A DNA stretch of 64,000 bases from Stylophora pistillata (taxonomy: Eukaryota): contig NW_019217786.1 of assembly GCF_002571385.2 (NCBI RefSeq), forward strand, positions 1,782,284-1,846,283, read 5' to 3'. Both the position numbers and the translations under genes were made by a program. Positions 62,081 to 63,415 of this stretch are shown here, piece after piece; position 1 is the first letter of the stretch; each line of letters opens with the position of its first letter. Below the pieces are notes generated by a model. It worked only from the letters and a program-made list of their open reading frames with translations. It was not told where the DNA came from and did not search any database.

Positions 62081-63415
62081 ATGGCTGTTCTCTCAGCACG
62101 ACAAATGTTTCCAAACCTGGAAAGCGATAGAATGACGATATCCAAACAAGGACAAGTGGCAATCATAAAAAACGGTTGTATCGAGCTATACGGAAGAGAT
62201 GTCACATGTGGTATTCCTTGGGTAAGCAGAAAGATTTCTGCGGGTCTCTCGAGGCCTTACGATCTGTGCTTTGCTCCAAATGACGCCCTAGTGGTCTCAG
62301 ACGTTGGCGATAACACGATCAAAATTTTTGATTTGACGCGAAATTTACCACCAGTAAATCAGATTATTATCGGCCATGACTTCTTTGGAAGGTTTATTGT
62401 TCTAGATCGAAGCAATGTACCCCATGTTAACATGAGAGCGTTGACAACTTTTCGAATCCCTCAAAACGTAGCCATTAGTCCAGGACCTTTATCGCAACTA
62501 TTCGTATCGAGTAGCACGGATATAATTCTGATGAACATGGACTGGAGTAAGCTAAGCCTGGTCAGCTACCTTCTTATTTGTTCTCCCTTAGATTGGCGAT
62601 TGCTGCAGTTCAATAAAAGATTAGTTTGTGATAATGTTAGTTCAGTGCAAGATCACAAAAACAGTCACAAGGTTGGTGGGTTCAATCCTATGGCAATAAC
62701 CGAAGCTCAGTTCTGTGGTATGTTTTACCACGTAACCGAAACGGACCGCACAGGATTTTCGTGTCTTGAACAGTCGAAATGCAACGTTGGAATACGAGGG
62801 GACAGGAGAAAATTTTCCGAAACGGTTGTGATTTACGTCCGAATAACGGAGAAGAACGGTCGACTTTTATTCCAAGCCAGATATGGCAACTGCTACGAAG
62901 GAGTTTACGAAAGTACGACCCATGCAGAATATTTTATGTTGGTGGATGATGATTTCAGACAAGCGGTCAACATGCTTCAAGATCAGAATGGAGGAGACAT
63001 TAACTTGTTCATGAACAAACAGCCTTGCTGTAGATCTACAGGACATGGTAAGAAAACGGACCTCAAAGTAAAAGACTGTGCTCAAGATCTGATCAAATTT
63101 TACAAGGTTTATTGCTTACCTCATGGAATAAAACTGGTAATTAATTTGTGTCAGTTGTACAAGATTGGCATGTCTCACAGCCCTGGGGAAAGATCTTTAG
63201 CTGCTGACATAGAGAATGCTCGATTAGGAGTGAAAATGATGTTATTCTATGGTATCGAGCTGATGGCAATGAGAAAAGACACCTGGAAATTACTAGCTGA
63301 GGCAGCGAAAGTTAATTTGCCGGCATATCAAGACAGCGATCGTCAGAAATTGGACCAATACATCAACCTTGTACTTTCAGAAATAAATAGAGCACCTATT
63401 CAATTTTACTACTAA
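62081..63415 (+). CDS. NHL-repeat plus AID/APOBEC-like (APOBEC4-resembling) zinc deaminase fusion, 444 aa
   Basis: Uninterrupted ORF; first ATG at 62081 (the track start 62051 is GTG). NHL motif LSRPYDLCFAPNDALVVSDVGDNTIKIFD (62246-62332); deaminase motifs ETVVIYVRI, YGNC, THAEY (HAE at 62921-62929), INLFMNKQPCC (PC 63023-63028), DCAQDL (C 63077), LVINLCQLY, GVKMMLFYGIELMAM..W. Confidence 0.85.
   Translation: MAVLSARQMFPNLESDRMTISKQGQVAIIKNGCIELYGRDVTCGIPWVSRKISAGLSRPYDLCFAPNDALVVSDVGDNTIKIFDLTRNLPPVNQIIIGHDFFGRFIVLDRSNVPHVNMRALTTFRIPQNVAISPGPLSQLFVSSSTDIILMNMDWSKLSLVSYLLICSPLDWRLLQFNKRLVCDNVSSVQDHKNSHKVGGFNPMAITEAQFCGMFYHVTETDRTGFSCLEQSKCNVGIRGDRRKFSETVVIYVRITEKNGRLLFQARYGNCYEGVYESTTHAEYFMLVDDDFRQAVNMLQDQNGGDINLFMNKQPCCRSTGHGKKTDLKVKDCAQDLIKFYKVYCLPHGIKLVINLCQLYKIGMSHSPGERSLAADIENARLGVKMMLFYGIELMAMRKDTWKLLAEAAKVNLPAYQDSDRQKLDQYINLVLSEINRAPIQFYY

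What the first reader, a model, noticed from the sequence alone, without database searches (positions are those of the whole stretch)
62081..63415. NHL-repeat plus AID/APOBEC-like deaminase fusion: candidate invertebrate nucleic-acid-editing immune effector
Seen: an intact 444-aa ORF. Its C-terminal third has, in order, every element of the AID/APOBEC fold: a beta-1-like ETVVIYVRI, the G-N before the zinc helix (YGNC), HAE (Zn-ligand His and catalytic Glu), NLFMNKQPC, CAQDL, LVINLCQLY (cf. AID ..ARLY, APOBEC4 ..SQLY), and the extra C-terminal helices (G.KMM...GI.L.AM....W) that separate AID/APOBECs from tRNA and free-nucleotide deaminases. The N-terminus has one clear NHL repeat and a degenerate second one (FRIPQNVAISPG..LFVS). 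No signal peptide is evident, so it does not look like a secreted SNAD-type enzyme. Known: AID/APOBEC-like deaminases occur outside vertebrates, including cnidarians, and NHL propellers (Brat, TRIM71) can bind RNA or protein. Inference: a cytosolic C-to-U editor with its own targeting module, possibly restricting viruses or retroelements. I cannot confirm whether this exact architecture has been described.
Basis: partly seen in the sequence, partly recalled or inferred. Interest (0 to 1): 0.92.

Follow-up and report, generated by a model that had tools for sequence, protein, structure and literature searches.

The report
Coral APOBEC-like deaminase with NHL blades
An intact, transcribed stony-coral gene encodes a known kind of nucleic-acid-mutating cytidine deaminase (APOBEC4-like) with a three-bladed NHL-type half-propeller at its front; coral relatives share this combination, but the papers I could read do not describe it.

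Summary
Window 62081-63415(+) is an intact 444-aa ORF in a Stylophora pistillata-type genome. Residues 191-317 match Pfam APOBEC4_like (E 5e-29). The AlphaFold2 model of aa 199-444 superposes on AID, APOBEC3G/3H and APOBEC1 (Z 15-17). H281-A-E283, P315-C316 and C333 are invariant in 61 homologs, as is a second set of His/Cys (the clade's Zn-binding insert).

The N-terminus (aa 14-178) is a confident partial beta-propeller of three blades plus a hypervariable hairpin. The family profile hits the TRIM2/3/71 NHL domains (E 3e-14 to 2e-11). It is NHL-type but not a closed six-bladed propeller.

The gene is under purifying selection (dN/dS 0.2-0.3) and lies in a tandem paralog array. RNA-like assemblies from three studies cover it.

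New here: a canonical 370-nt GT-AG intron inside the ORF (62222-62591) can be spliced out. That removes most of the NHL module and shifts the frame.

The deaminase clade, its Zn insert, its tandem arrays and its presumed immune role were described in 2011 and 2018. The NHL fusion was not, in the texts available. Activity, substrate and immune function remain untested.

Verdict: a real gene, an undescribed architectural variant of a known family, of moderate interest.

The parts
61916..63535 (+). Transcribed region seen in RNA-like assemblies. The 5' ends of the contigs lie at 61916, 61925 and 61956. The 3' end is undetermined because the contigs break at a high-copy repeat.
   Evidence: table 8: runs X1, X2 and X6 (three studies) tile 61916/61925/61956-63535. 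They have zero depth on the single-copy flanks 61201-61800, where the DNA-like run X15 has about 60x.
62081..63415 (+). Coding sequence of the 444-aa NHL-blade plus APOBEC4-like deaminase protein (stop codon included).
   Evidence: first ATG of the transcript. An identical protein is on record as P0001.
62120..62614 (+). N-terminal NHL-type partial beta-propeller, aa 14-178. Blade I is 62120-62236, blade II 62240-62380, the hypervariable hairpin 62393-62452, blade III 62453-62578 and the capping helix 62585-62614.
   Evidence: AF2 of the domain alone: pLDDT 84, pTM 0.81, 14 strands. Profile against PDB: TRIM2 NHL E 2.8e-14. NHL Pfam hits in 26 of 61 homologs. About 3 blades superpose at rmsd 2.2-3 A. 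The hairpin has the highest entropy, 2.71 bits.
62222..62591 (+). Exitron: a 370-nt canonical GT-AG intron inside the ORF (donor TGG|GTAAGC; acceptor is a pyrimidine tract followed by TTAG|A). It removes aa 48-170 and shifts the frame.
   Evidence: X6 record 27 (1250 nt) joins 62220 to 62591. Sequence. The retained form is also present in X1, X2 and X6. The donor is absent from paralogs and orthologs.
62206..62208 (+). Out-of-frame ATG. In the spliced mRNA it opens a 279-aa deaminase-only ORF (five new residues, then D171 to the end).
   Evidence: computed. Protein P0011, from an independent 1026-nt Logan contig, has exactly this N-terminus.
62627..62824 (+). Clade-specific Zn-binding insert ahead of beta-1 (aa 183-248). 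Invariant residues are H192, H196, C212, H217, C228 and C234. C271 (62891-62893) is the probable ligand supplied by the core.
   Evidence: Invariant columns. Lowest dN/dS, 0.08-0.14. The feature is described for this clade in PMC3239186 and PMC5889660. Modelled with low confidence.
62825..63412 (+). AID/APOBEC deaminase core with two extra C-terminal helices (aa 249-444). HAE is at 62921-62929, PC at 63023-63028, the second Cys (C333) at 63077-63079 and W402 at 63284-63286.
   Evidence: Pfam APOBEC4_like covers aa 191-317. Foldseek top hits are all APOBEC3/APOBEC1. VIA-align: AID Z 17.1, A3G 16.9, A3H 16.3, APOBEC1 14.9, APOBEC2 12.9.
63630..63635 (+). Candidate polyadenylation signal AATAAA, inside a MITE-like repeat. 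Not verified.
   Evidence: pattern only. The RNA contigs cannot show the 3' end.

Best explanation
This is a functional, single-exon, intracellular gene of a pocilloporid stony coral. [quoted passage not shown]

Shown:
- The catalytic apparatus is intact: H281/E283 on helix 2, C316 after beta-3, and C333 at the start of helix 3, with the clade's 16-residue insert between the two Cys.
- A second conserved His/Cys cluster forms the clade's Zn-binding insert in front of beta-1.
- The fold is that of AID/APOBEC, including the two extra C-terminal helices.
- The protein begins with a three-blade NHL-type open propeller fragment. This fragment is conserved with the deaminase in two paralog types (A and B).
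- The gene lies in a tandem array of diverging, recombining and partly pseudogenised paralogs.
- It is transcribed and under purifying selection.

Inferred:
- The enzyme deaminates C to U in single-stranded DNA or RNA of foreign or selfish elements, as APOBEC1 and APOBEC3 do.
- The NHL fragment acts as a recognition or regulatory module. Its variable face (the C-D loops and the hypervariable hairpin at aa 101-124) would be the specificity-bearing part, binding an RNA or a protein partner.
- In this gene copy only, an exitron offers a way to switch off or shorten the product. Splicing gives a 57-aa product from the main ATG, or a 279-aa deaminase without NHL blades from a downstream ATG.
For: - Family: Pfam APOBEC4_like E 5.4e-29. 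All 61 homologs match it, and 53 also match APOBEC_N.
- Catalytic and accessory residues: H/E/PC/C and the accessory His/Cys are invariant.
- Structure: AID Z 17.1, A3G 16.9, A3H 16.3. The Foldseek top 50 are all APOBECs.
- NHL module: family profile against TRIM2/TRIM3/TRIM71 NHL, E 2.8e-14 to 1.5e-11, over two blades per stretch. NHL is the leading propeller family in 26 of 61 members. Confident partial-propeller model.
- Selection: dN/dS 0.19-0.31 overall, 0.26-0.58 in the NHL part including the exitron, 0.08-0.14 in the Zn insert.
- Expression: RNA-like contigs from three studies span the whole ORF, and a splice junction is seen.
- Tandem arrays: three copies here, one with 3 stops, and 2 and 3-4 copies on two contigs of another coral assembly. 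Krishnan 2018 describes the same pattern for this clade in Nematostella.
- Variability: it is concentrated in the NHL hairpin (2.71 bits) and in the loop-7-like segment 363-372 (1.88 bits), while the core is conserved.
- No upstream ATG in the leader.
Against: - No enzymatic, substrate or induction data exist for this protein or, as far as I could find, for any member of this clade. Its nearest vertebrate relative, APOBEC4, is described as poorly understood in molecular function (PMC5889660).
- The NHL part has only three blades, so analogy with six-bladed RNA-binding NHL domains is weak.
- dN/dS is below 1 throughout, so no arms-race signature was demonstrated.
- The spliced, frame-shifted form is the deeper one in run X6 (21.4 against about 4), so much of the mRNA may not encode the full protein.
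- The runs are only guessed to be RNA.
- The Zn-site geometry was not measurable.
Confidence: 0.6

Rival explanations
1. The protein is a housekeeping or regulatory factor rather than an immune mutator. It would either be a site-specific editor of endogenous RNAs (as APOBEC1 edits apoB mRNA), or a non-catalytic nucleic-acid binder like APOBEC2 and APOBEC4, for which no activity is established.
For: - It belongs to the APOBEC4-related clade, and APOBEC4 and APOBEC2 are slow-evolving and of unknown activity (PMC5889660).
- The deaminase core is strongly conserved (dN/dS 0.15-0.24, entropy 0.6-0.9).
- Iyer 2011 suggested small-RNA editing for the Nematostella members.
Against: - All catalytic residues are invariant, which argues against a non-catalytic role.
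- Tandem lineage-specific expansion, a pseudogene, mosaic paralogs and variable specificity loops are typical of defence-type AADs, not of single-copy housekeeping editors.
Confidence: 0.2
2. The three-blade NHL fragment is chiefly an assembly element. Two or more chains would complete a closed propeller (2 x 3 = 6 blades), so that the enzyme is an obligate oligomer and the composite propeller is the functional surface.
For: - The model is an open fragment of 3 to 3.5 blades.
- Among its structural matches are engineered or split propellers built from 3-bladed fragments: 6r5z (Z 12.7-12.9, rmsd 2.2-2.4, 110-113 of 119 residues) and Pizza3, 3ww8.
- APOBEC3s are known to oligomerise (general knowledge).
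Against: - The monomer is modelled confidently as a compact domain with a capping helix (pTM 0.81).
- The full-length pTM of 0.73 suggests that it packs against the deaminase domain.
- The one homodimer prediction gave no verdict, which is neither support nor evidence against.
Confidence: 0.15
3. The full-length ORF is not the real product. The 370-nt segment would be an ordinary intron that happens to be open, and the gene's product would be the short form or nothing (a nonsense-mediated-decay target or decaying copy).
For: - The splice sites are canonical and strong.
- The spliced form is deeper than the retained form in X6.
- A 279-aa ORF from spliced RNA is on record as P0011.
Against: - The segment is in frame on both sides and encodes blades II and III.
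- It evolves under purifying selection at the protein level (dN/dS 0.3-0.6).
- It contains invariant residues P59, F64, D74, G76, D77, P127 and W155.
- The donor GT exists only in this copy; all the other genes compared have no donor there and must encode the blades.
- The retained form is assembled in all three runs.
- In the spliced mRNA the first ATG gives only 57 aa.
Confidence: 0.07
4. The N-terminal module is a WD40-type rather than an NHL-type propeller fragment.
For: - Blade II resembles the WD40 signature.
- A single-sequence search pulls long WD40 STAND NTPases (P0133 E 1e-26 over 13 stretches).
- Pfam WD40 scores 14.7 bits on the query.
- Structural matches are mostly WD40 proteins.
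Against: - Those WD40 scores are sums over 8-13 repeats of one blade.
- The family profile scores about 9 bits per blade on the TRIM2 NHL domain (56 bits over 6 blades, E 2.8e-14). On the 14-blade WD40 protein 2ymu it scores about 2.6 bits per blade (36 bits, E 2.5e-8).
- Among 61 homologs, 26 hit NHL at E <= 0.01 and only 3-4 hit any WD40 model.
- The top Foldseek hit of the domain alone is the TRIM2 NHL domain.
Confidence: 0.1

Closest known systems
Cnidaria-algae-APOBEC4 clade of classical AID/APOBEC-like deaminases (Pfam PF18774 APOBEC4_like; Iyer et al. 2011, PMC3239186; Krishnan et al. 2018, PMC5889660)
   Same: - Pfam match at E 5e-29.
- HxE / PC...C with a long insert between the two Cys.
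- A Zn-chelating His/Cys insert before beta-1, with a Cys supplied from between beta-2 and helix-2.
- Two extra C-terminal helices with a conserved Trp.
- Tandem arrays with pseudogenes and mosaic paralogs.
   Different: The main texts describe the Nematostella and algal members as a deaminase with the Zn insert only. They mention no NHL or propeller module. Here, and in two coral paralog types, a three-blade NHL fragment precedes the deaminase. Remote relatives at 26-32% identity mostly start 20-60 residues before the deaminase region, so they lack this module.
Vertebrate APOBEC4
   Same: - Same higher-order clade.
- Shared metal-binding insert.
- A weak hit to the Pfam APOBEC4 C-terminal model here, and hits in 45 of 61 homologs.
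   Different: APOBEC4 is single-copy, slow-evolving and has no N-terminal propeller. This family is tandemly expanded.
APOBEC3G/3F-type two-domain restriction factors
   Same: - A catalytic AID/APOBEC domain preceded by a non-catalytic N-terminal module in one chain.
- Structural match Z 16.9 to A3G.
- Clustered, expanding gene family.
   Different: In APOBEC3G the N-terminal module is a second (pseudo-catalytic) deaminase fold. Here it is an unrelated beta-propeller fragment. No activity or restriction data exist here.
TRIM-NHL proteins (TRIM2, TRIM3, TRIM71/LIN-41, Brat, Thin)
   Same: The family profile matches their NHL repeats (E 2.8e-14 to 1.6e-4), with the correct two-blade register. 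The top Foldseek hit of the isolated domain is the TRIM2 NHL domain.
   Different: - Those are closed six-bladed propellers behind RING, B-box and coiled-coil domains.
- This protein has three blades plus a hairpin and a capping helix, with no TRIM part.
- TM-score to full NHL domains is only 0.33-0.39.
Other AADs with N-terminal add-ons (nematode ZK287.1-type with eight CxC repeats; lamprey CDA2 with an AT-hook)
   Same: The principle is the same: an AID/APOBEC-like deaminase fused to a presumed targeting module.
   Different: The module is different (a propeller blade fragment rather than a DNA-binding Cys-rich or AT-hook element), and so are the deaminase clade and the lineage.

Membership tests
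AID/APOBEC-like deaminases (classical AAD; APOBEC4-like clade, PF18774) | Sequence match to the family model above its curated threshold | tested here: met
   101.2 bits against a cut-off of 26.7, E 5.4e-29, aa 191-317. All 61 of 61 homologs match.
AID/APOBEC-like deaminases (classical AAD; APOBEC4-like clade, PF18774) | Zn-ligand and catalytic motif H-x-E ... P-C-x(n)-C | tested here: met
   H281-A-E283, P315-C316 and C333 are invariant in 61 sequences. The PC-x16-C spacing is the clade's known insert.
AID/APOBEC-like deaminases (classical AAD; APOBEC4-like clade, PF18774) | AID/APOBEC fold with two additional helices after beta-5 and a conserved Trp between or within them | tested here: met
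   On a predicted model only: AID Z 17.1 (rmsd 2.6, 171 aa), A3G 16.9, A3H 16.3 over aa 199-444. Helices 371-389, 399-409 and 420-437. W402 is invariant.
AID/APOBEC-like deaminases (classical AAD; APOBEC4-like clade, PF18774) | Clade-specific Zn-chelating insert N-terminal to beta-1, sharing a Cys from the beta-2/helix-2 loop | tested here: inconclusive
   The candidate ligands H192, H196, C212, H217, C228, C234 and C271 are invariant. The region is modelled at pLDDT 45-73, and no coordinates are available to check the geometry.
AID/APOBEC-like deaminases (classical AAD; APOBEC4-like clade, PF18774) | Cytosine deamination in single-stranded polynucleotides | not testable with these tools
   Needs biochemical or mutator assays.
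NHL-repeat beta-propeller (PF01436; TRIM-NHL type) | Significant sequence match to NHL repeats | tested here: met
   The single sequence is below the cut-off (17.7 against 20 bits). The family profile hits TRIM2 NHL at E 2.8e-14, TRIM3 at 2.8e-12 and TRIM71 at 1.5e-11. 26 of 61 homologs hit NHL at E <= 0.01, best 1.8e-5.
NHL-repeat beta-propeller (PF01436; TRIM-NHL type) | Closed six-bladed propeller | tested here: not met
   - The model has 14 strands, which is three blades plus a hairpin in 165 residues.
- Only about 110-130 residues (about 3 blades) superpose at rmsd 2.2-3 A.
- TM-score to full NHL domains is 0.33-0.39.
- There is no further coding exon upstream: the RNA contigs are continuous from 61916, and 62081 is the first ATG.
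NHL-repeat beta-propeller (PF01436; TRIM-NHL type) | RNA or protein binding on the top surface | not testable with these tools
   Needs binding assays. The pI of the module is 8.4, which is unremarkable.
Exitron (intron inside a protein-coding exon, alternatively retained) | Canonical splice sites inside an ORF, with both the spliced and the retained form in RNA, and the retained segment coding | tested here: met
   - GT-AG sites with a strong consensus.
- The junction is in an X6 contig, and the retained form is in X1, X2 and X6.
- The segment is under purifying selection.
- Caveat: the runs are only guessed to be RNA, and the junction was seen in one laid run plus the independent contig behind P0011.

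The most novel reading that the evidence does not exclude
Corals have built a previously undescribed type of self-targeting nucleic-acid editor. An open three-blade NHL fragment, with a hypervariable hairpin as its recognition element, would recruit or gate an APOBEC4-like deaminase on viral or retroelement RNA or RNP, possibly by completing a propeller through oligomerisation on the target. Paralog diversification and, in this copy, exitron splicing would tune whether the targeted or the untargeted enzyme is made.
Probability: 0.15. Interest if true: 0.75.

Novelty: new variant of a known kind. Interest (0 to 1): 0.5.

Why it matters
AID/APOBEC enzymes are central to vertebrate immunity, and how they are aimed at their substrates is a key question. 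Outside vertebrates, activity has been shown for only a few members, such as those of sea urchin and brachiopod. I found no activity data for the cnidarian APOBEC4-like clade.

A conserved fusion to a recognisable interaction module gives a concrete handle on targeting in an early-branching animal. The full-length and NHL-less forms (the latter perhaps made naturally by splicing) can be compared directly.

The gene also adds to the inventory of coral innate-immunity genes. It is a compact, naturally modular cytidine deaminase that could interest people who characterise deaminases.

If the enzyme proves inactive or housekeeping, the finding reduces to an annotation improvement for 'uncharacterized' coral genes.

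Tried and rejected
1. Homodimer of aa 1-180 (complex prediction). Score 0.04 against a mark of 0.32, so no verdict. It is neither support nor evidence against oligomerisation.

2. Taxonomic range via cluster names. No member carried a name. Only Stylophora pistillata names and 'Cnidaria' were obtained, so the range beyond corals is not established.

3. Supplement of Krishnan 2018. It is not held, so I cannot exclude that the NHL module is shown in a supplementary figure.

4. WD40 classification. Considered because of the repeat-inflated hits. Rejected in favour of NHL.

5. Upstream coding exons. A splice-acceptor-like ttgcag lies at 62070-62075, but the RNA contigs run through it unspliced. 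NCBI's 520-aa model of the neighbouring paralog gains its extension from a paralog fragment upstream.

6. C>T at 62701 in all three RNA-like runs but not in DNA-like run X15. Considered as RNA editing. It is a synonymous third-position change (T207), and P0011 from RNA differs at several other sites. A strain polymorphism is most likely. No DNA from the same individual was available.

7. phmmer of the single sequence against PDB gave only noise. The profile search was needed.

8. Earlier findings of this scan: none for this place or these words.

9. Pfam on the other window ORFs of 150 aa or more found nothing.
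Full report
**What is there**

Window 62081-63415(+) is an uninterrupted 444-codon ORF. 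The window is G000:C3:1782284-1846283 of a 398-Mb assembly. The nearest named proteins lie on the same 2.4-Mb contig and are Stylophora pistillata entries, so the organism is that stony coral or a very close relative.

**The deaminase half**

- Pfam places aa 191-317 in APOBEC4_like (PF18774) at 101 bits, E 5.4e-29. There is a weak additional match of aa 331-402 to the APOBEC4 C-terminal model.
- In an alignment of 61 full-length homologs (A1) the following are invariant: H281 and E283; P315-C316; C333; R267-Y268-G269-N270-C271; W402; and a further set H192, H196, C212, H217, C228, C234.
- An AlphaFold2 model built on A1 (pLDDT 76, pTM 0.73) places H281-A-E283 at the start of a helix, C316 just after beta-3 and C333 at the start of the next helix. 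Three helices follow the last core strand.
- The top 50 Foldseek matches in the PDB are all APOBEC3 or APOBEC1 chains (E about 2e-7, TM 0.6-0.7 on the target).
- The Foldseek-independent search gives AID Z 17.1, APOBEC3G 16.9, APOBEC3H 16.3, APOBEC1 14.9 and APOBEC2 12.9 over aa 199-444.

The 16-residue spacer between the two Cys and the extra His/Cys cluster are known features. They are what Iyer et al. 2011 and Krishnan et al. 2018 describe for the Nematostella/algal 'cnidaria-algae-APOBEC4' clade: a Zn-chelating insert before strand 1, and an insert between the catalytic cysteines. The Zn insert is modelled poorly (pLDDT 45-73). I had no coordinates, so convergence of the ligands on one metal site could not be verified.

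**The N-terminal half**

- On the single sequence, NHL scores 17.7 bits, below Pfam's cut-off of 20, and WD40 scores 14.7.
- At family level the signal is clear. The A1 profile hits the NHL domains of TRIM2 (E 2.8e-14), TRIM3 (2.8e-12), TRIM71 (1.5e-11), Thin and Brat (about 1e-4). Each hit has three stretches, each aligning profile positions 8-88 to two consecutive NHL blades.
- 26 of 61 homologs hit Pfam NHL at E <= 0.01, against 3-4 for any WD40 model.
- Long WD40 STAND NTPases appear in the single-sequence representative search. They owe their scores to 8-13 repeats of one blade.
- Modelled alone, aa 1-180 folds confidently (pLDDT 84, pTM 0.81) into 14 strands and a C-terminal helix. This is three four-stranded blades (aa 14-52, 54-100, 125-166) with an extra hairpin (105-124).
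- Structure searches align only about 110-130 residues, roughly three blades, at rmsd 2.2-3 A. The matches include engineered three-blade fragments (6r5z, Pizza3). The TRIM2 NHL domain is the top Foldseek hit, but at TM 0.39.
- So the module is NHL-type by sequence but an open half-propeller, not a closed six-bladed NHL domain.
- A homodimer prediction gave no verdict.
- Positional entropy is highest in the hairpin (2.71 bits) and the blade-I C-D segment (2.29 bits). In the deaminase domain it is highest in the loop-7-like segment 363-372 (1.88 bits), while the core sits at 0.6-0.9 bits.

**Is it a real, used gene?**

I laid the contigs of four public runs on 58001-64000.

- The DNA-like run X15 covers every bin at about 60x.
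- Three runs from three other studies (X1, X2, X6; guessed to be RNA) have zero depth on single-copy intergenic stretches such as 61201-61800. They tile 61916/61925/61956 to 63535, which is the whole ORF plus a 125-165-nt leader.
- 62081 is the first ATG of that leader.
- Pairwise Nei-Gojobori estimates used the paralog 5 kb downstream, a Tara Pacific coral-metagenome ortholog and four genes from another coral assembly. They give dN/dS of 0.19-0.31 overall: 0.26-0.58 for the NHL part, 0.08-0.14 for the Zn insert and 0.15-0.24 for the core.

**An unexpected feature: an exitron**

- One X6 contig (1250 nt) joins 62220 to 62591.
- The skipped 370 nt (62222-62591) start with G|GTAAGC and end with a pyrimidine tract and TTAG|A. 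This is a canonical intron lying wholly inside the ORF.
- The retained form is assembled in all three runs.
- Splicing removes aa 48-170 (blades II and III) and shifts the frame. The main ATG then gives 57 aa. An out-of-frame ATG at 62206 opens a 279-aa deaminase-only ORF.
- Exactly that protein (P0011) exists in the public collection, from an independent 1026-nt RNA-derived contig.
- The donor GT is unique to this gene. The paralog and four relatives have TGG ATG GCx (or GGG ATG CCC) at that place. The splice is therefore a recent, copy-specific event, not a conserved way of making two isoforms.
- The skipped segment is clearly coding (invariant residues, dN/dS 0.3-0.6), so it qualifies as an exitron.
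- Its significance is open. It could be down-regulation, an NHL-less enzyme made through leaky scanning, or noise.

**Family context**

- The genome holds three tandem copies: this one, an intact copy 69% identical and 5 kb downstream, and a 42%-identical 'type B' copy with three stop codons.
- Another coral assembly has arrays of 2 and 3-4 genes that mix type A and type B. Type B carries an Arg-rich C-terminal tail.
- Paralogs are mosaic. The Tara ortholog is closest to this gene in the NHL half and closest to paralog 2 in the deaminase half.
- Tandem arrays, a pseudogene within the array and mosaic paralogs are what Krishnan et al. report for this clade in Nematostella.
- In a search of 1.84 billion cluster representatives, only about six 50%-identity clusters combine the N-terminal module with the deaminase. 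Relatives at 26-32% identity mostly begin 20-60 residues before the deaminase region, or carry other N-terminal domains.
- The ESM Atlas holds the protein's own cluster: 101 members, APOBEC4_like in 100%, NHL detected in 12%, Cnidaria.

**Comparison with the literature**

The main texts of Iyer 2011, Krishnan 2018 and Liu 2018 contain no mention of NHL or a propeller fused to an AAD. A full-text search for APOBEC + NHL + cnidarian returned nothing. Krishnan's supplement was not available. The neighbouring paralog is annotated only as 'uncharacterized protein' or 'hypothetical protein'. One GenBank model is a chimera of two paralogs.

**Mechanism**

Shown: an intact AID/APOBEC catalytic centre and fold; an accessory conserved His/Cys cluster; a conserved NHL-type three-blade module; transcription; purifying selection; tandem diversification.

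Inferred: C-to-U deamination of single-stranded nucleic acid from foreign or selfish elements, with the NHL fragment as a recognition or regulatory module whose variable hairpin and loops carry specificity.

The alternatives are an endogenous editor or non-catalytic binder, an oligomerisation-driven propeller, and the spliced form being the main product. The rival section weighs each.

**Verdict**

This is an undescribed architectural variant (a half NHL propeller plus an APOBEC4-like deaminase, with a copy-specific exitron) within a family known since 2011 and 2018. Interest is moderate.

Noticed in passing
G000:C3:1849546-1850865 (L002) and G000:C3:1852494-1853747 (L003), just beyond the window's end: There are two further tandem paralogs. 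One is intact (69% identical). The other is a type-B copy (42% identical) interrupted by one TGA, one TAG and one TAA, so it is a likely pseudogene in this assembly.
   Followed up: partly
L002:41-703 (upstream of paralog 2): A free-standing fragment encodes a type-B N-terminus (blades I-II). NCBI's 520-aa model LOC111322856 (P0004) splices it onto paralog 2. GenBank model SpisGene528 (P0008, 494 aa) is a chimera of paralog 2 and the interrupted paralog 3.
   Followed up: partly
L004 (Tara Pacific metagenome scaffold) compared with window 62081-63415 and L002: The relationship is mosaic. L004 is closest to this gene in the NHL half (dN 0.11 against 0.33) and closest to paralog 2 in the deaminase core (dN 0.07 against 0.13) and the C-terminal tail. 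This suggests gene conversion or recombination among paralogs.
   Followed up: partly
L005:11258-12649 and L006:12504-13886: Type-B paralogs in another coral assembly end in an Arg-rich tail (a run of 4-5 Arg preceded by Lys/Arg). This may be a nuclear-localisation or nucleic-acid-binding tail. It is absent from type A, including this gene.
   Followed up: no
window 63509-63697 and 63697-63801: Two MITE-like palindromic elements lie directly after the stop codon: 26-nt terminal inverted repeats 137 nt apart, and a 46-nt-arm hairpin. They are very high-copy in all runs, and they break the RNA contigs, which hides the transcript's 3' end.
   Followed up: partly
window 58600-59000, 59800-60000, 60200-61200: Further high-copy repeats lie upstream of the gene, with summed contig depths 10^3-10^6 times the single-copy level in both DNA-like and RNA-like runs.
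   Followed up: no
window 62701: C>T in every contig of the three RNA-like runs but not in the DNA-like run. The change is synonymous (T207). It is probably a strain polymorphism rather than editing, but no DNA from the same individuals was available.
   Followed up: partly
proteins P0226 and P0232 (distant relatives, unnamed sources): Distant AID/APOBEC-like relatives carry other N-terminal modules. P0226 has a 2OG-Fe(II) oxygenase (AlkB-like) domain followed by APOBEC_N. P0232 has a CCHC zinc knuckle ahead of the deaminase region.
   Followed up: no
window 63750-64000 (-): RNA-like contigs of about 900-1000 nt run on the opposite strand out of the window's end, which indicates another transcribed unit immediately downstream.
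   Followed up: no
window 1099-3144, 21680-22543, 34710-35538: The only other ORFs of 150 aa or more in the window have no Pfam match. Several overlap each other on both strands, which points to compositional or repeat ORFs rather than genes.
   Followed up: partly
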